Below are positions 395 to 59,642 of a stretch of DNA of 64,000 nt, piece by piece; positions within the stretch are counted from its first letter, which is position 1, and each line of letters starts with the position of its first letter. The DNA is from Octopus sinensis (Eukaryota): the NCBI RefSeq assembly GCF_006345805.1, contig NC_042999.1, positions 103,912,001-103,976,000 on the forward strand, given 5' to 3'. The position numbers were made by a program, and so were the translations under genes. The notes below the pieces were generated by a model. It searched no databases and had not been told where the DNA came from. It saw only the letters and a list, made by a program, of their open reading frames with translations.

Positions 395-740
395 ATTTTA
401 GTGGCTTCTTGACTTGCTAGAAATATCAGTTAAATGGCACAAAAGAACAAGAAATACTGTAATCCTAAATGCAGCTAAAATGATAGATAGGGTGATCAAA
501 GCACGAATTCATTTGATCAAAAGGACCTTTGATTAGGATTGACTGGGGTTATCAAACAAGTCATACAAACAATATATGCTGAGGAAATTCCTATGCAGTC
601 ACCTGAAATGCTAGAAATAGCAACCAAACTCTCTCAAATCACATCCTACTATTTTAATAAAAGAAAGGAGGATACATTGGATGATGCAGTCCTGTAAACA
701 TTGTACATAAGAAATAGATTGGATACTCTTTTGGCCTTTT
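395..740 (+). repeat. Family G repeat, two adjacent decayed copies
   Basis: tgcta-GAAA-tagca-type hairpin at ~416 and ~609; first copy ends in the 'ggggttatcaaac' tail variant. Confidence 0.7.
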
Positions 741-1099
741 GTTTCAATCATTTGACTGTGGCCATGCTGGAGCACTGGTTTTAGTCGAGCAAATTGACCC
801 CAGGACATATTCTTTGTAAGCCTAGTACTTATTCTATTGGTCTCTCTTGCCGAACCGCTAAGTTACAGGGATGTAAACACACCACCATCAGTTGTCAAGC
901 GATATGGGGGGGGGGGCACAAACACATACATACACATATATACAACAGGCTTCTTTCAGTTTCCGTCTACCAAATCCACTCAAAGGCTTTGGTCGGCCCG
1001 AGGCTATAGTAAAAACACTTGCCCAAGGTGCTATGCAGTGGGAATGAACCCAGAACCATGTGGTTGGTAAGCAAGCTACTTACCACACAGCCACTCCTG
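727..1099 (-). mobile_element. tRNA-derived SINE family A (CORE-like; OR-type octopus SINE), full length
   Basis: rc of head 'caggagtggctgtgtggtaagtagcttgc...accttgggcaagtg' and tail 'cagtcaaatgactgaaac'; near-identical to 46372-46781 and 62302-62672. Confidence 0.85.
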
Positions 1100-1589
1100 G
1101 TTATAGTTAGAACGCCTTTTATCATGAATTTATTCAGTATAAACCGATTTGAGACAACAACATAACAACAAAAACAACAGCTCATACAAACATATCAAAT
1201 AGTAAAATATAGAAACCAAATAACAGGTAAGGTGCAATACAGAGTTTTAAGAACTATATAAATAAAAGACTTACATTTTGAGATGAGTTAATTTTATCTG
1301 TGAGGACTTCATTGGCCACTTTGAGCTCTTGGTTCACTTGGTTAGCATGATCTAAGTCCTGCTCCATTTTGGCAAGGTCTCTCTGGCTACACTTGATCTC
1401 CCGATTTGTCTGAAAATTTCAAGAGAAAAACTTTGAGTGTGACATGTGTGATTGAATTTCTGCTGAAGGGAATGGAAATTTCTGGAAATCACAAATTCAA
1501 CAGAAAAAGGATTTTCTACATTGATTATTTGATCTGTGAGAAATGGCTGCCACCTCAAATCATTAATTTCTTCATCACTGTCATCAACA

Positions 1590-1765
1590 TTTAAACCCTT
1601 TATCATTTAAAATGGCTATATCTGGCCAAAATTTTCTACTTGTTTTATGTTCAAACTGACCAGATCTGGTCTCTCACACCTACCCTACAACATCATTCTA
1701 AAACTAAGCAATCACATCATCAAAATCTGAAAGCTACAAGATAATGCAGGATTAATCATTTATGC
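1590..1765. mobile_element. piggyBac-like MITE family E, partial
   Basis: Internal sequence matches complete copies (47919-48131, 59091-59318). Confidence 0.65.
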
Positions 1766-2212
1766 AATTGCTAGCAATAATAGTCCAAATCTTCTTCAAC
1801 CCAACTATCTTAGAAAAAAGGAAAAGACACACTGCATAATGTAGTCCAAGATACACTATTTCTGAAAAAATATGAGATGGTCTTAGTTGGAATATTTTTG
1901 ATTGCTAGTCTGCTAGACAACAATTAAACAAAAAATTGAAGTCTTGAATATTGGGGTTTTTGGGGTCTTTTTATTTGAATTTTCATAGATGCATGGTTTG
2001 ACATCTTTTAATAATGGAACTAAAGAAAAGTACCTTGTGGGAGTGCTCTGAGCACTAAATACTCATAATGTAAGATCTCATATGAATAATATAGTGAGCT
2101 GCAAAACTTCAAATAAGTGAGACTATTCGTACATTTAGTAACCAAATGTTCCTACTATAGATTTTTTAAAATTCTATAAAAAAAGGGAGGTGTGTGAGTG
2201 TGTGTGTGTTAT

Positions 2213-2640
2213 ATATTTTATCATTTACTTATTTCAATCATTGGACTGTGACCATGCTGGGGTACCACCTTGGAAGGTTTAGCTAAGCATAACCCTGGTA
2301 CATATTTATGCAAATCTACCAGTGGCATATGGTGATTGTTGTGCTGAGTGTGCTGCCACACCCAATGCCACCAAATTTCAAGCAGGGGTATGACAAAAGT
2401 TTTCCATTAAGATTTGTGATTAAAGTTAATATTTATAATGAATTTTCCATTTTCAATGGGTGTGGAGCTCATACCTAGCACACTCAGAATATTCACTCCT
2501 AAAGTCTACTACTTATTCATTCTATCAGTCTCTTTTGCTGAATCACTAAGTTGTGAGGATGTAAGTATTCCAACATGTTGTAAACTGCTGGGGGAGTAGC
2601 AGTCAGCCACACACACACACACACACACACACTTATGTGT
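2213..2640 (-). mobile_element. Decayed SINE-A 3' half interrupted by a ~180-bp insertion
   Basis: SINE-A tail pieces at 2213-2310 and 2500-2640 flank unrelated sequence. Confidence 0.55.
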
Positions 2641-3109
2641 ATGCATAAATGTATATTTTTCCTAAGATAATTTCTCCATCACAGAATTCAAGCCTTATCA
2701 TTAACATGGTAATTCCAGGAATCTATATGTAAGAGGAATTGTGTGTGTATCTTCATATATGTTAATGTATGTGTATGTAGAAGTACTTGCACTCATATAA
2801 TGAGAATGTATATATCATTATAGATATACAAGTGTGTATGTGTGCATGTGTGTCTGTGTATGTGCAATTACTTTTTCTCTGTATATGTTCATTCTAAAAA
2901 TTTTACATGGAGAATCTTTGGAATGTACTATAAATCTTCATTGTATATTAATCAATTTATGTGGACACTGCAAATTAGATTGCTTTGTTCTTTCTTTCAT
3001 GTGTGTGTGTGTGTATGTGTAAGAGCGAGAGAGAGAAAGAGAGAGTTTATGAATGTATCAGTGTACAAACATACATATACCTATATATGTGTCAAAATCG
3101 AATGTAAAT

Positions 3110-7410: not shown

Positions 7411-7625
7411 AACTTTTCAGCATTCAGATAACTGTCAAATGTGATGCTTACTTCTTCACACTGTTTTGAATTAACTATGCATTATCTTGTCGCTTCAAGA
7501 TTTCAATGATGTTATTGTTTATATTTAGAATGACATCACAGGAAAGGTTCGAGAGGCCAGACTGAACATAAAATAAGTAGAATATCTGGACCAGGTACAG
7601 CCAGTTTAAATGCTAATGGGTTAAA
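7410..7625. mobile_element. piggyBac-like MITE family E
   Basis: ttaact...cagcattcagat to aatgctaatgggttaa; TTAA at both ends. Confidence 0.7.
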
Positions 7626-8339
7626 CAATGACGATGATAATGATGATGATGATGTTATAGCAATTTCGTAGTGAAGATAAATGAGACATGTTTCCCATGG
7701 AGTTTCCATGAGTCTGGCTAATACATAATATAATCTAAGTAATATGTCTCCTGGGGCTAAACAACAGTAGTATTCATCCCAACCAGGACTGCCACATTAG
7801 GTTGGCAAATAATCTTTACTTTAAAGTATTGCTACTGAATATCTCTCATTGAGAAATTTAGGAACAATAATGTTTCTATTTAATATACTGTTATACATAG
7901 TATACACTTAATACATATTAAACATACATACATAGAATGAAAACAATTTCCAACTCACATTTTTGGTTAAAACCTCTTTCTCAGTTTCTAGAAGTTTGAT
8001 TAGCTGTTCATTTTCTACCTTTTCCTTCAGCAGTCGTCTATTTTCTTCTTTTAATCTGAAATGATAATGAAATAATTCATAATTTTGATGTTAAAAAAAA
8101 GAATGAATAATAAAAAATATTCAGGTGTTGAGATTTTTAAGTTTTTGACAATTTACATTGAGTCAGTGCAAAGAAAAAAATACAGAGCTCCAATGTCTGC
8201 TTTGGCAAAGTTTCTAAGATTGGATGCCTTTCTTACGGCCACCCACTTTACAGAGTGTACTAGGTGCTTTTTACACAGCACCAACACTAGTGAGGTCACC
8301 AAATACACGGTAAAAAAAAAAAAAGACCCCTTTCAGTTA

Positions 8340-20140: not shown

Positions 20141-20209
<69 letters not shown>

Positions 20210-20231
20210 TCATCATCATCATCACTACTAT

Positions 20232-20671
20232 TTAACCACTTAGCATTTAAACAGGCCGTATAAACCCCCAAATGTTCTACCAGTTTTATGCTGAAACTGA
20301 CCCGATCAAGCCTCTCATGCCTACCCTACAATGTCATTCTAAAAATAAACAATCACATCATCAAAATCTCGAGACTCAGTGACAATACGTGATTAATTTT
20401 TTAAAATGTGGATAAAGAAGCTTTACATTTGATAAATTAATCTGAATGCTGAAGGGTAAAACAGGTCGTACCCAACCCCTAATGTTCTACCTGTTTTATG
20501 TTCAAACTGGCCAGATCTGGCCTATCACACTTATCTGGCAATGACATTCAAATCATAAACAATCACATCATAAAAATCTCAAAGCTACAAGATAATGCAT
20601 GATTAATTCAAAAACAAAGGGAATAAGTAAACATTACATTTGACAGAGTAATCTGAATAATAAAGGGTTTA
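20232..20671. mobile_element. Two tandem MITE-E units (second 5'-truncated)
   Basis: Body 'atgttctacc...ctacaatgtcattc...gataatgcatgattaatt...aatctgaat' occurs twice. Confidence 0.75.
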
Positions 20672-24440: not shown

Positions 24441-24621
24441 ATTGATTGATGTTGCTGTCACAGTGCTGGTGTTAATGATTGTTGTGGTGATAGGGGTTCT
24501 ACTGCTGGTGGTGGTGGTGGTGGTAGCAGTGCCTGTTGTTGTGGTCATGATAGCAAAGGTGATAGTAGATAACTGTAGTTGTGGTGCTAGTGAGTTTAAT
24601 GGTATTGATAATGGTGGTAGT

Positions 24622-24959
24622 CATCATCATCATCGTTTAACGTCCGTTTTCCGCGCCAGCACGGGTTGGACGGTTCGACCGGGGTCTGGGAAGCCAGGGG
24701 CTGCTCCAGGCTCCAGTCTGATCTGGCAGAGTTTCTACGGCTGGATGCCCTTCCTAACGCCAACCACTCCGCGAGTGTAGTGGGTGCTTTTTACGTGCCA
24801 CCTGCACAGGTGCCAGGGGGGGTCCGGCATCGGTCACGATCGGTTGGAGCTTTTAACGTGCCAGCGGCACGGAAGCCAGCCAAGGCGGCGCTGGCAACGT
24901 TTGGATGGTCTGTTTTATGTGCCACCGGCACAGAAGCCAGTCGGGGCGGCGCTGGCATC
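24622..24959 (-). mobile_element. Young RTE-derived non-autonomous element (family D) with 6-bp TSD
   Basis: (CAT)n tail at 24622; CpG-rich; ggtagt at 24616-24621 and 24960-24965. Confidence 0.85.
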
Positions 24960-32530: not shown

Positions 32531-32604
32531 ATGGGTTCTCTAGATGTTCTCTATTCGTCTAATTATTGATTTCTCACATAGGCACAAGGCCTCAGATGGT
32601 GAGT

Positions 32605-33152
32605 GAGTATAGACAATTCTACTGAGTTCAAATTCTGCCAAGGACAACTTAGCCCTTCATTCTTTTGAGGTCGATAAAATAAGTACCAGGGGAACATGGG
32701 GATCAATGTAATTGACTTAACTATTCTTGGGTAAGTGTATGAGAACTGCACCCCCTCTGCTAAGCCATGTCGAGCCAGAGTGACAGAGTATAGACAATTC
32801 TATTGAGTTCAAATTCTGCCAAGGACAACTTAGCCCTTCATTCTTTTGGGGTCGATAAAATAACTACCAGGGGAACATGGGGATCAATGTAATTGATTTA
32901 ACTATTCTTGGGTAAGTGTATGAGAACTGCACCCCCTCTGCTAAGCCATGTCGAGCCAGAGTGACAGAGTATAGACAATTCTATTGAGTTCAAATTCTGC
33001 CAAGGACAACTTAGCCCTTCATTCTTTTGGGGTCGATAAAATAACTACCAGGGGAACATGGGGATCAATGTAATTGACTTAACTATTCTTGGGTAAGTGT
33101 ATGAGAACTGCACCCCCTCTGCTAAGCCATGTCGAGCCAGAGTGACAGAGTA
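32605..33152. repeat. Recent 181-bp tandem triplication (SINE-B fragment + unique flank)
   Basis: Unit starts at 32605, 32786 and 32967, with a fourth 'gagta' at 33148; copies differ at about 4 sites. Confidence 0.95.
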
Positions 33153-36320: not shown

Positions 36321-36940
36321 AACACGCACACAGATAATCCACATTACTCTGTAAGGAGTATAGGGCTGGGTTTCCTAGTTTATCTGGCGTATATATTTCT
36401 CTCTGGATGGGACACTAATATATATATATACATACATACACAGTAAAATCAATAAAAGAAATACAGTGAACTGGAATAAGGAATGGAAAATTGAACGTTT
36501 TGGATGTTATGGACAGTCCTTCATCAGGGAAAAAGTTGAAAAGAGAGAAATTAATGAGTGAGCAGAGTTTTACACTCTACTGTCTTTCATTAATTTCTCT
36601 CCTTTTATCTTTTCCCTTGAAGAAAGACTGTATCCAAAACATTGGATTTTCTGTTCCTCATGGCAAGGTCACTGTACTCTTTCATTGATTTTGCTACATA
36701 TTATATAATTCTTGCCAACACAAAACAAAGTAGTTTCATAGGAATCTGTTTGGCCATACATATGTATATACATGTATAAATGTACATAGTTATCTATAAC
36801 TTAATACATTAAAGTGTTCCCTAATAAGCTATTGTGGGTGAGCATTTGGAACACCTATTCTAGGGTTCCAAACAACCATAATGGTGAAATGTGCTTAAGA
36901 ACTATTTCTCATATATATCACTTAAGCATAGAGGGGACTA

Positions 36941-39727: not shown

Positions 39728-39856
39728 GTTTAGGACAATCAATAAGTTGCATTATAGTTTCAAAATGTTTGTTTAATTTGTTTAGTGTTTATGTGTGTGC
39801 CTGAACATGTCTGTGTTACACATGGACGGACGGACGGACGGACGGGCAGACAGACT

Positions 39857-39890
<34 letters not shown>

Positions 39891-40233
39891 TGCATGTGTA
39901 TGTATACACACACGTGTGCATGAGTCTGGTTCCACATGTTATCACATTTACACTGCTTGGCTAGCAGAGGTGTTTGTTTCTGTCCTACCCAGCAGCTCAA
40001 TCGCCAGACACCACTGGAATGAAGTACCTTACTTGAAATTAAGTCATAACTGACATCAAGAAAGGCAACTGACCAGAGACTAGTGTTCCCAAGAAGTTTC
40101 ACTGAACCCACACCAACATGGAAAAAGTAAATGTAAAAGTAATAATGATGTGAATAAGAAGAGGTGGGAATTTGCAATATACCAATCAATTACATGTATA
40201 TTAATTTATTACTCCCCTTCGTAAATATATAAG

Positions 40234-40378
40234 GACACAGTAAGTGTGTCGAAGCCAACAGGAAGCGTCGATGCTTCCTAGGGCTAAACAGCGGTGGTGT
40301 AACCCCCTACTGTCACGTTAAGTTGACAGTATACAACCATTATATCGCCCTACCACCGTACATATCTCTATGAGATAT
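40234..40378. ncRNA. Unassigned structured element (4 hairpins + pseudoknot)
   Basis: Stems gacaca/tgtgtc, aggaagc/gcttcct, tactgtca/tgacagta and atatctc/gagatat; crossing pairs agggc/gccct and cggtggt/accaccg; CpGs retained; single copy in the window. Confidence 0.35.
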
Positions 40379-41520
40379 TTAGAAATTTAATGTTTCTGAA
40401 TTAATTACACGCTAAAGTTTTACTGTTGCTACACTAAATTTCATGACACTTGGTGTTCTATTTCCTCTTCTCTCCCTCTCTTTCTCGTGTGTGTGTGTGT
40501 GTGTGCGAGAGATCTGGGTTGGGGCATACCTATATTGTTAAAATAGTTAGAACATCATCTAGAAGTACTATTTACATAAGATGAATAGATTAATATAAAT
40601 TTTACTTTACATAAATTATATATACAACTGATATTTCAGTGCACTAAATAAATAAATATAAATGTTTCAATGTCAATTTACAAAACTTCAAATATTCTTC
40701 TGATTTCATTTATGTCACTTAAGATTGTTGATATACCATCTTAGCCATCTTTAACACACTTTTGTAAGAATAAAAAAACCTATAAACAGGCTTTGCTTGC
40801 ATATATAATGTTGATAGTACACATCGAGTGTATATGAGAGGGGGGAGGACTCATTGAAATCACCATCCAAATGTCAAGATGTAGAATAAATGACAATGAT
40901 AATTTTTTTTTCCATTTTTTTCCCCTTCCAATTAGTTTTCATGTTTCCCACCACCACCACCACTCTACCTGGTTAAATAGATGTTTGTGTGCAATTAAAA
41001 TAGAGAACAGTCTAGAAGTACTTCATTTTTTTTTTTATTATAAAGTCAATGAATTAACAAAGCCTTATAGTATGGTTTTGTCAAACAATTTAAGTGGAGT
41101 GGGAGCCCTAAGCAGTGACGTGTATGTTTGAACTGGCATATTTGATGTGTATATTTGAACACTGAATTTAAGAAGCCTGCTATATTAAAGGGAGAGCATG
41201 AAAAACCTCATGGTCAACGTAACTCACAAAATTTGATTCCGTAAAAGCCACAAAAATACAATTAACACTTTAACAAGTAGTAATAAAGGGTTAAATGACA
41301 TAATAACAATAATTGTACAAAATTTAATGATGATAATTCAATAACATCCTATTTTCACAAGCAACTTTTTATAGTGTACACTAATCATGCTGTTAATGTG
41401 ATATAGCAATATGGTGCTATTGATTGAACCATAAACTCAACATTTATGCCATACAGCCACTGAGCTGTGCTCCTGATAATGACTCAGTCCTTTGATATAT
41501 CAACATACATGACTTCTTCC

Positions 41521-42363: not shown

Positions 42364-42499
42364 AATGCAAATGCACTTATTACATTGTATATATGCACTT
42401 ATTGCTACTATTATTACATTGTAAATATATATATATATATATATAAAGTACCATATTCATCTGAATCTAAATTTTTGCTGAACTTATATAGATATATAA

Positions 42500-42870
42500 C
42501 TAGCAATATCGCCCGGCGTTGCTCGGGTTTGTAAGGGAAATAACTATATAAGCATTTTTAGAGATGTAAAGTATAATAGCCATCTCAATATGGCTAACCA
42601 CAAAGGGAGGGGGTGTTACTGTAGCTTTTTACGTTCTGAGATTTAATAATAAATTTTTAGAGAATGGCAAAAATGCATTAAAAATGGGAAAAATTGATGG
42701 TAAATTTTTTTTTAAATTGTAGACGCGCGCTAATACCCAGAAGGGCTCGATATGAATCACGACTATAAGATACCCGGTTTTGGTTAAACTGCACCGCAAA
42801 ATGTGGGAGTAGTTAGGAATCTAAATCGTAGGAGACAGACAGCACACAACCTTACTTTTATATATAAAGA
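42500..42870 (-). mobile_element. Non-autonomous Helitron, copy 1
   Basis: Minus strand: 5'-TC, 3' hairpin CCCG-AGCAACGC-CGGG then 8 nt then CTAG, followed by host T. Confidence 0.85.
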
Positions 42871-43376
42871 CTAGCAGTATCGCCCGGCGTTGCTCGGGTT
42901 TGTAAGGGAAATAACTATATAAGCATTTTTAGAGAGTTACTTCCCTTATAAATTCGGGCTTTCTTAGCCATTTTTGTTTTGGTGTCTTCAAGCCGTGAAG
43001 TCGTTATTCTAAAAGAACGCTGGTTTCCTTCACAACGCATTACGACGTTGATTTCTTTACACTCCCTTCCCCACAGCTTCACGAGGGAGGGAAGGGGGAG
43101 AAGCAAACAGGTGCAGCTGTGAGCGTGGACGCCAACTCCGCCGCCATCGACACACGATGCACTTTATGCATTAAAATGGAATAAAAAATGATGTTAAATT
43201 ATTTTTAAAATCGTAGACTCATCGTTGACGCGCGCTAATAGTCAGATGGGCTTGACATGAATCACGACTATAAGATACCCGAATTTGGTTAAATTGCACC
43301 GCAAAATGTGGGAGGAGTTAGGAATCTAAATCGAAGGGGACAGACACTCACACAACTAGAGTTTTATATATATAGA
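42871..43376 (-). mobile_element. Non-autonomous Helitron, copy 2 (longer variant), directly abutting copy 1
   Basis: Host A|TC at 43377/43376; same 3' hairpin + CTAG (42871-42874); shares both ends with copy 1 but has a different middle. Confidence 0.85.
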
Positions 43377-43380
43377 TATA

Positions 43381-47918: not shown

Positions 47919-48131
47919 TTAACCCTTCAGCATTCAGATTACTCTGAAATATAATGCTTATTTATTCACATTGTTTTGAATCAATCAAGCATTATCTTAT
48001 AGCTTTAAGATTTTCATATGGTAACAATCTTTTATAATGACATTGTATGGTTGGCGTGGGAGGCCAGTTTGAACACAAAACAGGTGAAATATTTAGGCCA
48101 GATATGGCCAGTTTAAATGCTAAAATGTTAA
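47919..48131. mobile_element. piggyBac-like MITE family E, complete
   Basis: TTAA-cccttcagcatt ... aaatgctaaaatg-TTAA. Confidence 0.85.
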
Positions 48132-48710
48132 ACAGAAAAGTGAATGATTGTTGAAGGATCTCTGACATTTACCCTCGAGTCTATGTTTTACTTAAAAGTC
48201 AGACTATAATTGCCTTTATTAAAGTGTTAAATTAATAACCCAGAGAAGCTATTGAGTTAATTATGCAATAAACTGCATCCATAGGCTCCTGTGTGATGAA
48301 CATATTTAATGTACTAAGTCTGCAATGTTAGGCTTCACTGCTGACTAGACGAGGCTGAACTATATAAGTTGAGACTGCACTTATAGAGAGATAAGACAAT
48401 GATTGCTGCCTTAGATTATTTAAGAAGGTTATAAAAATACTTCATGAAAGGTAATTAAAAAAAAACTGTCAGACTTAAGCCAGCCATAAACCCACCCCTG
48501 GCTTCCCCAATAAATTTGTTTTTATAAGCTCATTAATTTGTGTTAATAAAATATGATGTCATAGCTTTTAATATTGGATAACATACTTTTATAACAAGGT
48601 TGTTATTGTTTAGCCCCCTATTCAGCCTTAATTGAGCAAATCCATGACTAAGGGCATTCTACCGATGATTATCCTGTCATTTTACATGTTAGGGACACCA
48701 CCATCTAATA

Positions 48711-54612: not shown

Positions 54613-55859
54613 GCATGTATAAAGTTATTTTCATTGATCCCATTATATGACAGGTATTATACTGACTTTGGAAAGAGCAGTAAACCTTGACTCACATAGG
54701 ATTTATTTATTTTGTGAACAATAGCATCATTGATTATAGGTTTTGGATGTACGGACCAATCACTAGTTCACTGATGGTGAGAGTGACAAGAGATTATCTG
54801 TGCAACTCAGACAAAATAATTACCAGAAAGTATTTTTATTCAATGCAATGGTTTATGAGAGGTAATTTTATTGCCAATACATATGTATGCTCCTCTGTGT
54901 ATGCGCATGCCTGTGCGTGTGAGTGCACACACACACACGTGCATGCTATGTGCATGCATAATGTTGTTTGTGGCGTGTGTGTTATGAAGATAGCATAAAC
55001 TGACAATATGTCAGAATGCAGTTCCATCCAATCTTACGCCAGCATAGATAGACAGGATGTTAAAACAGCGTCGGAGATGGTGATGTGTATGAATGGAGGT
55101 GTTGTGTGAGCAAGTGTGCATGACCTCCACTCCCAGACACAAACCATTTAGCTAAGTAAAAAGGATGGACAGGAAGACTGATAAACAGCTGACTACATAC
55201 AATACATATATGTTTGTGCGCATGTGTGTGTGCACGAGGTTGCAAGCACACACATACATACGCTTGCATAACAGACAAGCAAAAACCAAACAAATACAAA
55301 TCAGTAGAAAACTCATATGCATACATAATATCAAATATTAGTTCACTAGTAACCTCTAACTGTTTTTGTCTCTTTGTTTGCATCACCACAACCTGTTAAA
55401 ATAAATAGCAGCTAAATTTCCTCCAAATCCCAAGTTTATCTTAAACCTTTTGTTAAGACACTTCTGATGAAATAAAGTTCCTTTGCTTCAATTAATTCTG
55501 AAAATATTGACGGATTCAGTAAAATAACTGTCATTGTTAACTAGTGTTTGGTTTGTAACAAAATGTATCAGAACTAAAAGCAATTTCAGGAGGATTGGCT
55601 GTAAAAAGTTTTCAAAATTTGAAGGACACATTAATTAGATAAGATAATATCAGATTCACTTAAAAGACCAGAATGTTGACAACCCGGATCATAGAACTTT
55701 GATCAAAGATGTTCAAAACTGTCATTAAAAAAACAAAAAACAGACAAGAAATACAAAGAACCAATGAAGTGATATCTCTCACTAAATAAGTAAATTATAT
55801 GTGTGTGCTTGAGTGTGTGTGTGTGTGTGTGAGGATAACTATGCATATATAGATAATGA

Positions 55860-57864: not shown

Positions 57865-58035
57865 TTCAAATTTTTGCCACAAGGGCAGCTTGGGATGAGT
57901 CGATTACAGTAACCCCAGTCTTCAACTGGTATTTATTTTATCGATCCCAGAAGGATGAAAGGCAAAGTCAACCTCACGGAATTTGAATTCAGATGGACAA
58001 AATACCACTAAGCATTTCATCAAGCGCACTAATAG
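57865..58035 (-). mobile_element. SINE family B
   Basis: rc Meta-like core. Confidence 0.75.
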
Positions 58036-58057
58036 TTGAGATTAATAATATACTTTA

Positions 58058-58207
58058 TTTGGTCTTGTCAGTCTCTTGCTACTCAAGTTTCTCCTGTGAG
58101 TGCATAGGATCTTCAGGCAAGTTATGAGTCATAACTTGCCTGAAGATTTTGTGCACTCACAGGGGAAACTCAAAGTAGCTAGAGACTAAGAGACTGACTC
58201 AACCAAA
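58058..58207. repeat. Near-perfect ~150-nt palindrome (hairpin) centred on 58128
   Basis: 42 consecutive pairs 58086-58127 / 58129-58170 (38 Watson-Crick + 4 G:U on +); outer arms continue with an 8-nt insertion. Confidence 0.9.
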
Positions 58208-58289
58208 ATAATAGTTGTTTTGTTTTTTTTACCTGTTTCAGTCAATGATCTGCCACCATACTGGGATATCCACCTTGAAGGGTTTAGCC

Positions 58290-59090: not shown

Positions 59091-59318
59091 TTAACTCTTT
59101 AGTATTCATATTATTCTGTTGAAAGTAGTACTTATTTATTCACCTTGTTTTGAATTAATCATGCATTATCTTGTAGCTTTGAGATTTTGATGAGGTAACT
59201 ATCAATTTTCAGAATGATATTATAGGGTTGGTGTGAGAGGCTAGATCTGGACAGTTTGAAGATAAAACAAGTTGAATATTTTGGCTGGATATGGCAGGTT
59301 TAAATGCTGAAGTGTTAA
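59091..59318. mobile_element. piggyBac-like MITE family E
   Basis: TTAA at both ends. Confidence 0.8.
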
Positions 59319-59642
59319 ACAGGTTTGCTTGATCAGAACTAAATCGGATGGAGTGAGCAGAGCTAAACAACAATAATTACAACCAATTAAGCAGAATACT
59401 ATTTATCAACTCAGGTATCCATGAAGTCCCTTCAAGAGAAAAGAGCAGGGACCCAACTCTAAAACAAGTAAGACTGATACAATTGAGTCGATGCTTATGG
59501 CCAGAGATGGTGTGTGGGTGAGATACAATATGGATAATGAGAAAAGGAAACTGATGTTGGGTGGTTTTCACTAAGCCAGTTCGGAAGAACAGAGGCAGTT
59601 GTAATACCAATAAAAGTAGAATGAGGAGTTATCATTGCTGAC

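What the first reader, a model, noticed from the sequence alone, without database searches (positions are those of the whole stretch)
40226..40411. Unexplained compact, CpG-retaining, highly structured element: candidate novel ncRNA or ssDNA structure
Seen within ~145 nt: hairpins 40234-39/40245-50 (6 bp), 40260-66/40273-79 (7 bp), 40308-15/40324-31 (8 bp) and 40362-68/40372-78 (7 bp). Two crossing helices, agggc(40280-84)/gccct(40347-51) and cggtggt(40292-98)/accaccg(40352-58), have contiguous 3' strands, giving a pseudoknot or switch. CpGs are retained despite depletion in old flanking DNA. TATATAAG at 40226 lies ~30 nt before GGAAG (40261) and TTTT occurs at 40408-40411. No match by eye to any repeat family in the window or to hammerhead, HDV, twister, pistol or spliceosomal snRNAs. 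Inference: could be a ~150-nt Pol III type-3 RNA, a new ribozyme-like fold, a promoter, or a transposon terminal structure.
Basis: partly seen in the sequence, partly recalled or inferred. Interest (0 to 1): 0.7.

Follow-up and report, generated by a model that had tools for sequence, protein, structure and literature searches.

The report
Young copy of a short repeat
The hairpin-rich, CpG-rich 190-base patch is most likely a recently inserted copy of a short non-coding mobile repeat, because an older decayed copy lies 32 kb away in the same window; this is ordinary in a repeat-filled octopus-like genome.

Summary
All four hairpins and both long-range helices are at the stated coordinates. CpG o/e is 1.0 against 0.25 for the window. 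The fold beats all 16,000 dinucleotide shuffles (z about -5). Only the TTTT coordinate is wrong (40418-21, not 40408-11). The claim of no repeat relative in the window is also wrong: nhmmer finds a diverged same-strand copy at 7744-7877 (E=2e-6) matching 40271-40398, with every CpG lost, three of four to TG/CA. Homology ends exactly where a 9/10 direct repeat (40203-12 / 40399-408) delimits a 186-nt unit, 40213-40398, holding 8 of the 9 CpGs. Copy 2 lacks the 5' 58 nt (TATA-like octamer, hairpin 1, half of hairpin 2). Seven of the eight other CpG-retaining blocks in the window are also repeat copies. The old copy keeps 28 of 33 pairs of the shared helices (neutral expectation 21-22, p 0.001-0.008), so the source lineage probably maintained the fold. 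The pseudoknot, TATA box and T-run are at chance level. Rfam, tRNA scans, Pfam and viral, prokaryotic and metagenome scans find nothing. Best reading: a young SINE-like or truncated-LINE-tail retroposon copy of an unclassified family. Genome-wide copy number and orthologues could not be reached. Interest is low.

The parts
40213..40398 (+). Copy 1: proposed 186-nt unit of the repeat. It is young, with CpG o/e 0.96, and holds 8 of the 9 clustered CpGs.
   Evidence: Bounded on the right by the end of homology to copy 2 and on both sides by a 9/10 direct repeat. RNA fold z = -4.1 and ssDNA fold z = -5.4. Stops in all six frames.
40203..40212 (.). Candidate left target-site duplication, AATTtATTAC.
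   Evidence: Matches 40399-40408 at 9 of 10 positions. Chance p = 0.02-0.04 when the right copy is required to sit at the homology end.
40399..40408 (.). Candidate right target-site duplication, AATTaATTAC.
   Evidence: Starts at the base after the last position shared with copy 2.
40226..40233 (+). TATATAAG octamer, inside the unit and absent from copy 2.
   Evidence: TATAWAWR occurs 3 per kb in the window, so it is not distinctive.
40234..40250 (+). Hairpin 1 (6 bp, loop 5), present in copy 1 only.
   Evidence: No counterpart in copy 2.
40253..40285 (+). Hairpin 2 (7 bp plus a 4-bp extension). Only its 3' arm lies in the part shared with copy 2.
   Evidence: z = -3.6 for 40213-40290.
40271..40398 (+). 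Module shared with copy 2 (about 65% identity).
   Evidence: nhmmer E = 2e-6. Local alignment scores 88 against a shuffled maximum of 70. A 22-nt motif occurs only in the two copies, with 0 expected by chance.
40291..40359 (+). Long-range helix (40291-99/40351-59) enclosing hairpin 3 (40308-16/40322-31).
   Evidence: Predicted independently in both copies. The outer helix keeps 8 of 9 pairs in copy 2, with two G-C to A-U double changes, one of them CpG-driven. The inner helix keeps 7 of 9, with one U-A to C-G double change.
40362..40378 (+). Hairpin 4 (7 bp, loop 3).
   Evidence: 6 of 7 pairs unchanged in copy 2.
40379..40399 (+). Hairpin 5 (7-8 bp including 2 G.U), ending at the 3' end of the unit.
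   Evidence: 7 of 8 pairs kept in copy 2, three through one-sided changes.
7744..7877 (+). Copy 2: an older copy of the same family, shorter at the 5' end and free of CpGs.
   Evidence: Three of the four shared-region CpGs of copy 1 are TG or CA here. It folds into the same four helices, but its own z is only -1.3.

Best explanation
The element is a recently inserted copy (unit 40213-40398, + strand) of a short, non-coding, non-autonomous interspersed repeat of an unclassified family. It most likely spreads through an RNA intermediate, either as a SINE-like retroposon or as the 3' end of a 5'-truncated non-LTR (LINE) element.

Proposed mechanism. The family's + strand RNA carries a string of stem-loops, the last of which ends at the RNA's 3' terminus. 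A partner LINE reverse transcriptase would recognise that structured 3' end and copy it into a nicked AT-rich target by target-primed reverse transcription. That process leaves a duplication of about 10 bp and often yields 5'-truncated copies.

How this accounts for the observations. Copy 1 is too young to have lost CpGs in a region where older DNA has lost about 75% of them. Copy 2 (7744-7877) is an old, 5'-shorter insertion that has decayed. The hairpins are a property of the family's RNA that was maintained in the source lineage. They are not a locus-specific gene.

Shown here: a second copy exists, its CpGs have decayed, the two copies share a 3' end but differ at the 5' end, there is a candidate TSD, and pairs are retained above the neutral expectation.

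Inferred, not shown: the RNA intermediate, recognition by a LINE partner, and the copy number in the whole genome.
For: A second copy is found by nhmmer (E = 2e-6), by local alignment and by a 22-nt motif unique to the two loci. The flanks on both sides show no homology (p = 0.53 and 0.99; p = 0.25-0.33), so this is an interspersed unit and not a segmental duplication. Three of the four shared-region CpGs of copy 1 are TG or CA in copy 2, and copy 2 has no CpG. The candidate TSD (9/10) starts exactly at the homology end, with p = 0.02-0.04. Copy 2 starts inside hairpin 2, which fits 5' truncation. Seven of the eight other CpG-retaining blocks in the window are repeat copies with 8-35 relatives. 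The unit is non-coding: all frames have stops and Pfam finds nothing. Copy 2 keeps 28 of 33 pairs against a null of 21-22 +/- 2.2, p = 0.001-0.008. Slid-partner controls give 33-52% of cells paired against 92%. G.U pairs occur on the + strand (4 in copy 1, none of the A/C type). Literature context: O. vulgaris is about 66% repeats, and 893 unclassified SINE families account for 4,510 recently active insertions (PMC13282606). Octopus 5mC is concentrated on a subset of gene bodies (PMC9476566).
Against: Only two copies could be examined, so genome-wide copy number is unknown. No tRNA, 5S or 7SL-like head and no A/B boxes were found. ARAGORN finds nothing and Rfam finds nothing. A B-box-like GTGTCGAAGCC at 40246-56 has 2 mismatches, and my own calculation gives about 0.2 such matches expected by chance. 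There is no poly(A) or simple-repeat tail at the 3' end. The TSD is AT-rich and only moderately significant. The count of double-sided compensatory changes (4) is not clearly above its null (p = 0.03-0.24), and one of the four is a predictable outcome of CpG decay in both arms. Copy 2's own fold is not significant (z = -1.3). CpG retention could also come from protection against methylation rather than from youth.
Confidence: 0.75

Rival explanations
1. It is a DNA-level mobile element fragment (MITE, Mutator-like or hAT-like non-autonomous element, or a Helitron end). On this reading the hairpins act in single-stranded DNA or as protein-binding palindromes.
For: Hairpins 1-4 are perfect Watson-Crick palindromes. 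The unit folds even better with DNA parameters (z = -5.4). A 10-bp TSD would fit Mutator-type elements. Recently active TIR elements and Helitrons exist in octopus (PMC13282606).
Against: There are no terminal inverted repeats at the unit ends or nearby. By direct reading, the Helitron signature is not met (5' TC after a host A, 3' CTRR before a host T, GC-rich hairpin 10-12 nt from the end). The two copies share one end and differ at the other, which is typical of 5' truncation during reverse transcription. G.U pairs occur on the + strand only in copy 1.
Confidence: 0.12
2. Copy 1 is a functional gene for a structured small RNA of about 140-165 nt, for example a Pol III type-3 gene with TATA at about -30. 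Copy 2 would be its retro-pseudogene. CpGs would be kept by selection or by lack of methylation, not by youth.
For: TATATAAG lies about 30 nt before hairpin 2, and copy 2's homology starts about 10-15 nt after the predicted start site, as expected if only transcribed sequence was retroposed. The first T4 run lies 20 nt after the last hairpin. The fold is well below shuffles, and pairs are retained in copy 2.
Against: The TATA octamer lies inside the TSD-delimited unit. TATA-like octamers occur 3 per kb and T4 runs 7.5 per kb. The shared unit ends about 20 nt before the TTTT. No Rfam family matches, even at E<=10. A retro-pseudogene lying only 32 kb from its parent gene is improbable unless the family is very abundant, in which case this copy is probably just another insertion (inference). 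A pseudogene decaying neutrally would not be expected to keep pairs above the neutral rate.
Confidence: 0.07
3. It is unique non-mobile sequence, such as an unmethylated promoter or first exon or another protected regulatory patch. The match to 7744-7877 and the hairpin cluster would both be coincidences.
For: The hairpin cluster alone is at chance level for a best-of-64-kb pick. A TATA-like motif is present. Octopus promoters are reported as unmethylated (PMC9476566).
Against: The match to copy 2 is significant by three methods. It shows the CpG to TG/CA pattern expected of true homologues. No ORF or Pfam signal was found, and no convincing splice donor downstream (and direct reading).
Confidence: 0.04

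Closest known systems
SINEs and other short non-autonomous retroposons of octopus. The named examples are the tRNA-derived OK, OR1 and OR2 families of Ohshima and Okada 1994, as cited in PMC4824008. Also relevant are the roughly 900 'unclassified SINE' families in the curated O. vulgaris repeat annotation (PMC13282606).
   Same: It is short (186 nt), non-coding and interspersed. It has a candidate TSD of about 10 bp. Its copies share a 3' end and differ in 5' extent. It shows a young CpG-intact copy alongside an old decayed one. It sits in a window dense with SINEs.
   Different: No tRNA, 5S or 7SL-derived head or A/B boxes were detectable. There is no A-rich or simple-repeat tail. It shows no sequence similarity to the abundant SINE families of the window.
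Structured 3' tails of 'stringent' LINEs and their partner SINEs, such as eel UnaL2/UnaSINE1 and the 'common tail' concept of Ohshima and Okada 2005. This comparison rests on my own knowledge; the reference is listed in PMC4824008.
   Same: Stem-loops sit at the very 3' end of the unit. The shared module is the 3' part. The helices are retained between diverged copies.
   Different: No partner LINE was identified. There are no short tandem repeats after the terminal hairpin. Recognition by a reverse transcriptase is inferred, not shown.
Pol III type-3 small RNA genes (U6, 7SK, RNase MRP, Y and vault RNAs) and their retro-pseudogenes.
   Same: A TATA-like octamer lies about 30 nt upstream of a compact structured region of about 140 nt. 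A T4 run lies downstream. The second copy lacks the upstream part.
   Different: No Rfam match was found. The motifs are at background frequency. The TATA octamer falls inside the TSD-delimited unit. The T4 run falls outside the shared unit.

Membership tests
SINE (sensu stricto) | Short (<~700 nt), non-coding | tested here: met
   The unit is 186 nt. All six frames have stops. Pfam finds nothing.
SINE (sensu stricto) | Many interspersed copies | tested here: inconclusive
   The 64-kb window holds two copies with unrelated flanks. Genome-wide number could not be tested because the genome is not in any reachable collection.
SINE (sensu stricto) | Internal Pol III promoter in a tRNA-, 5S- or 7SL-derived head (A and B boxes) | tested here: not met
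   ARAGORN finds nothing in standard, mitochondrial or relaxed modes. Rfam finds nothing at E<=10. The only B-box-like 11-mer (40246-56) has 2 mismatches, which is near chance expectation.
SINE (sensu stricto) | Flanking target-site duplication | tested here: inconclusive
   A 9/10 direct repeat lies at 40203-12 / 40399-408, with p = 0.02-0.04 given the independent boundary. Copy 2 has only a weak 6-bp candidate.
SINE (sensu stricto) | A-rich, simple-repeat or LINE-derived 3' tail | tested here: inconclusive
   There is no A-tail or tandem repeat after 40398. A structured 3' end is present, but no partner LINE is known.
5'-truncated non-LTR (LINE) 3' end | Copies share the 3' end and differ at the 5' end | tested here: met
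   Copy 2 begins at the position matching 40271. The CpG-intact part of copy 1 extends to about 40213. Both copies end at ...AATGTTTCT.
5'-truncated non-LTR (LINE) 3' end | Longer copies run into a reverse-transcriptase ORF | not testable with these tools
   No longer copy is available. The window has no RT-like ORF.
Pol III type-3 small-RNA gene | PSE plus TATA box at about -30, and a T-run terminator at the RNA's 3' end | tested here: inconclusive
   TATATAAG is present but lies inside the TSD-delimited unit. TATAWAWR occurs 3 per kb. The T4 run at 40418 is outside the shared unit, and T4 runs occur 7.5 per kb. The cephalopod PSE is unknown.
Pol III type-3 small-RNA gene | Belongs to, or is conserved like, a known small-RNA family | tested here: not met
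   Rfam 15 finds no hit on the element at E<=10 and none in the window at gathering score.
Self-cleaving ribozymes (hammerhead, HDV, twister, pistol and others) | Match to the family's covariance model or catalytic core | tested here: not met
   No Rfam ribozyme model hits at E<=10. No CUGANGA...GAAA core by direct reading.
TIR DNA transposon / MITE | Terminal inverted repeats at the unit ends | tested here: not met
   No inverted repeat links the ends. Only AT-rich chance-level pairs were found.
Helitron terminus | 5' TC and 3' CTRR termini, a hairpin about 10 nt from the 3' end, and insertion between A and T without a TSD | tested here: not met
   By direct reading, the base before the TC at 40213 is C. 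The CTGA at 40396-99 is followed by A. Copy 2 has CTAT at that position.
NUMT / mitochondrial tRNA cluster | Mitochondrial-type tRNA genes | tested here: not met
   ARAGORN -mt and -mtmam find 0 genes.

The most novel reading that the evidence does not exclude
Copy 1 is not a dead insertion. It would be a live source gene of a lineage-specific structured small RNA of about 140-185 nt, an unrecognised Pol III- or Pol II-transcribed ncRNA whose helices are under selection. Copy 2 would be one of its retro-copies.
Probability: 0.06. Interest if true: 0.5.

Novelty: new member of a known kind. Interest (0 to 1): 0.12.

Why it matters
As found, it matters little. It adds one more short, unclassified, recently active repeat to a genome type already known to hold hundreds of such families. 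There is a methodological lesson for the scan. In a CpG-depleted window, a small CpG-intact patch is a marker of recent insertion. Also, a by-eye verdict of 'no repeat relative' can miss a 65%-identical decayed copy that a profile search finds. If the fold retention holds up across many copies, the 3' module would be a candidate recognition structure for a partner LINE reverse transcriptase in octopods. That would interest transposon specialists modestly.

Tried and rejected
1. Known RNA families were rejected. Rfam found nothing on the element at E<=10 over 38-43 kb and nothing in the whole window at gathering score.
2. tRNA and mitochondrial tRNA (NUMT) were rejected. ARAGORN found none in any mode.
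3. A coding exon was rejected. The + frame is open for only 47 codons, no Pfam hit appeared in any frame, and the splice sites are unconvincing.
4. A foreign or contaminant origin was rejected. Exact 25-26-mers and a degenerate 22-mer gave zero hits in viral, prokaryote-genome and metagenome collections.
5. Reaching orthologues or more copies through protein handles failed. The flanking 135-aa mechanical ORF is not on record and has no relatives. A SINE-encoded ORF returned only one 538-nt ENA contig.
6. A search for a third copy in the window failed with a two-sequence nhmmer profile and with a covariance model run with filters off (the next best hit is 13.5 bits, E about 0.1).
7. Homology of copy 1's 5' part to the 70 nt upstream of copy 2 is not significant.
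8. No empty-site paralogue of the joined flanks exists, because copy 1's flanks are unique in the window.
9. No convincing TIRs or tandem structure surround the element.
10. The first whole-window z-score scan timed out. It was replaced by a regression on dinucleotide content.
11. A search of SINE-superfamily paper text for the conserved blocks found nothing.

Full report
1. THE OBSERVATION

Reading the sequence and an automatic hairpin scan confirm the four perfect hairpins at the stated coordinates:
- 40234-39/40245-50 (6 bp)
- 40260-66/40273-79 (7 bp)
- 40308-15/40324-31 (8 bp)
- 40362-68/40372-78 (7 bp)

They also confirm the two long-range helices (agggc/gccct and cggtggt/accaccg) and the TATATAAG octamer at 40226. 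The only coordinate error concerns the T run: TTTT is at 40418-21, not 40408-11.

CpG retention is real and sharply bounded. Nine CpGs lie between 40220 and 40410. There are none for about 200 nt to the left and none for 75 nt to the right. CpG o/e is 1.03 in the element against 0.25 for the whole window.

As RNA, the + strand folds at -56.5 kcal/mol with z = -5.3, and the - strand gives z = -3.4. In a deeper test, none of 16,000 dinucleotide-preserving shuffles reached the observed energy; the best was -55.8.

2. HOW FAR THIS EXCEEDS CHANCE

- Across the window, the element's fold excess after regression on dinucleotide content ranks 18th of 2,062 windows, about the 8th distinct locus. It falls behind long inverted repeats at about 58.0 and 36.5 kb and behind several microsatellite and SINE loci.
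- Clusters of at least four hairpins of 6 bp or more per 150 nt occur at three loci in the real window. They also occur in 7 of 20 Markov-simulated 64-kb sequences.
- The per-window p for four hairpins is 0.0004.
- A per-window fold p of about 3-6e-5, over about 700-3,000 effective windows, is borderline at 0.03-0.15.
- A long-range perfect helix of at least 7 bp appears in 52% of shuffles of the element. So the 'pseudoknot or switch' is not supported by copy 1 alone.
- TATAWAWR occurs 3 times per kb and T runs of four or more occur 7.5 times per kb.

What is genuinely unusual is that a strong fold coincides with a CpG-intact patch.

3. A SECOND COPY

blastn with short words found nothing. nhmmer at maximum sensitivity found one significant match, with E = 2e-6: window 7744-7877, same strand, aligned to 40271-40397 (repeated).

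Independent checks agree:
- The local alignment scores 88 against a maximum of 70 in shuffles.
- The 22-nt degenerate motif CCTRGGGCTAAACARCRGTRGT occurs only at these two places even with 3 mismatches allowed, and 0 are expected by chance.

Identity is about 65% over roughly 130 aligned columns. Copy 2 contains no CpG. Of the four CpGs of copy 1 in the shared part, three are CA or TG in copy 2 (CGG to CAG, CACGTT to CACATT, CCG to CTG). That is the signature of deamination of methylated CpG in an older homologue.

Neither flank is homologous (right p = 0.53, left p = 0.99; a gentler test of the 5' part gives p = 0.25-0.33). So this is an interspersed unit and not a segmental duplication.

No third copy exists in the window. 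A two-sequence profile found none. A covariance model run with filters off scored the two copies at 160 and 153 bits, and the next best hit at 13.5 bits.

4. BOUNDARIES

Homology ends at ...AATGTTTCT(G), at 40398 in copy 1 and 7877 in copy 2. Immediately after 40398 comes AATTaATTAC (40399-408), which matches AATTtATTAC at 40203-12. With the right copy constrained to the independently defined homology end, a 9/10 match has p = 0.02-0.04.

This delimits a 186-nt unit, 40213-40398. It contains 8 of the 9 clustered CpGs and folds with z = -4.1 as RNA and -5.4 as ssDNA. The last hairpin ends at the unit's 3' terminus.

Copy 2 begins inside the loop of hairpin 2. It therefore lacks the 5' 58 nt of copy 1, which hold the TATA-like octamer, hairpin 1 and the 5' arm of hairpin 2. 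This is the pattern left by 5' truncation in target-primed reverse transcription.

The TATA octamer lies inside the unit and the TTTT lies outside it. Both facts count against the Pol III type-3 gene reading.

5. IS THE FOLD A PROPERTY OF THE FAMILY?

Folded alone, copy 2 gives the same four helices over the shared part: the long-range helix, the enclosed hairpin and the two 3' hairpins. Its own z is only -1.3.

The MAFFT alignment was not fitted to structure. On it, copy 2 keeps 28 of 33 pairs: 19 unchanged, 5 changed on one side, 4 changed on both sides. Sliding the partners by 1-3 columns gives 33-52% of cells paired, against 92% for the structure itself.

Redistributing the observed substitutions at random gives 21-22 +/- 2.2 pairs kept, so p = 0.001-0.008 under three nulls. 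One of those nulls holds the CpG sites fixed.

The number of double-sided changes is not clearly above its null (p = 0.03-0.24). One of the four (G-C to A-U at 40293/40357) is a likely outcome of CpG decay in both arms of a palindrome.

Wobble pairs sit on the + strand: copy 1 has 4 G.U pairs and no A/C pairs.

With two sequences, this is modest evidence that the source lineage maintained the helices of the 3' module as + strand RNA. There is no comparative evidence at all for hairpins 1 and 2. The 5-6 bp crossing helix degrades in copy 2 to mostly G.U pairs plus a mismatch.

6. CONTEXT

The window has no tRNA gene, no Rfam family at gathering score and no convincing protein-coding ORF. It is packed with tRNA-derived SINE copies and microsatellites.

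Seven of the eight other CpG-retaining blocks are copies of repeats with 8-35 relatives in the window. One example is the two tandem young copies at 42.5-43.4 kb, with o/e 1.09. The eighth block is impure GT/GC low-complexity sequence. So in this window, CpG-intact means recently arrived repeat.

The literature agrees:
- O. vulgaris is about 66% repeats, and 893 unclassified SINE families contribute 4,510 recently active insertions (PMC13282606).
- Octopus 5mC is concentrated on a subset of gene bodies (PMC9476566). That fits a long-methylated, CpG-depleted region in which only new DNA still has its CpGs.

7. WHAT IT IS AND HOW IT LIKELY WORKS

The best-supported reading is a young copy of a short, non-coding, non-autonomous retroposon of an unclassified family. 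It would be SINE-like, or the 3' end of a truncated LINE.

Its structured 3' end would be the handle for a partner reverse transcriptase. This follows the 'common tail' principle of LINE/SINE pairs, which I take from my own knowledge of Ohshima and Okada 2005 and the eel UnaL2 work. That step is inferred, not shown.

I do not file it as a SINE in the strict sense, because the defining Pol III head was looked for and not found and there is no A-rich or repeat tail.

Rivals:
- A DNA-transposon fragment. There are no TIRs and the Helitron termini are not met.
- A live small-RNA gene with a retro-pseudogene. The motifs are at background frequency, the boundaries do not fit, and a pseudogene only 32 kb away is improbable unless the family is abundant.
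- A protected unique regulatory patch. The significant second copy contradicts this.

8. LIMITS

The animal's genome is not in any collection I could search.
- Exact-pattern scans of viral, prokaryotic and metagenomic contigs found nothing.
- The flanking ORF is not on record and has no relatives.
- Even an ORF encoded by the window's most abundant SINE returned a single 538-nt contig.

Genome-wide copy number, the family consensus, the orthologous (empty or filled) site and a proper covariation test therefore remain undone. They are the decisive next steps.

9. VERDICT

It is most probably an ordinary young repeat copy with a family-level RNA fold. Interest is low (0.12). The most novel reading not excluded is a live lineage-specific small-RNA source gene, with probability about 0.06.

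Noticed in passing
window 42490-43380: Two tandem copies of about 370 nt of a young CpG-rich repeat (block o/e 1.09). Each starts ACTAGCA(A/G)TATCGCCCGGCGTTGCTCGGGTTTGTAAGGG and shares a ...GACGCGCGCTAATA...ATGAATCACGACTATAAGATACCCG... body. nhmmer finds relatives elsewhere in the window, for example at 24616-24724.
   Followed up: partly
window 58033-58280 and 36457-36700: These are the two strongest fold excesses in the window (regression residuals of -68 and -50 kcal/mol per 186 nt on both strands). They are long inverted repeats and far more structured than the reported element.
   Followed up: no
window 7453-7674: Copy 2 of the element lies about 70 nt downstream of a copy of an abundant SINE-like family with a (GAT)n tail. 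That family has at least 10 copies in the window, for example 1533-1756, 20209-20412, 47963-48137 and 59137-59322.
   Followed up: partly
window 54902-55087: A CpG-retaining block (7 CpGs, o/e 0.74) with no other copy in the window. On reading, it is impure (GT)n/(GCGT)n low-complexity sequence.
   Followed up: yes
window 39825-39890: A (GACG)n to (GACA)n tetranucleotide array lies 320 nt upstream of the element. Its CpG-containing units grade into CpA units along the array.
   Followed up: no
window 32599-33152: Three tandem copies of a 181-nt unit at 97% identity (family D15 of the repeat scan).
   Followed up: no
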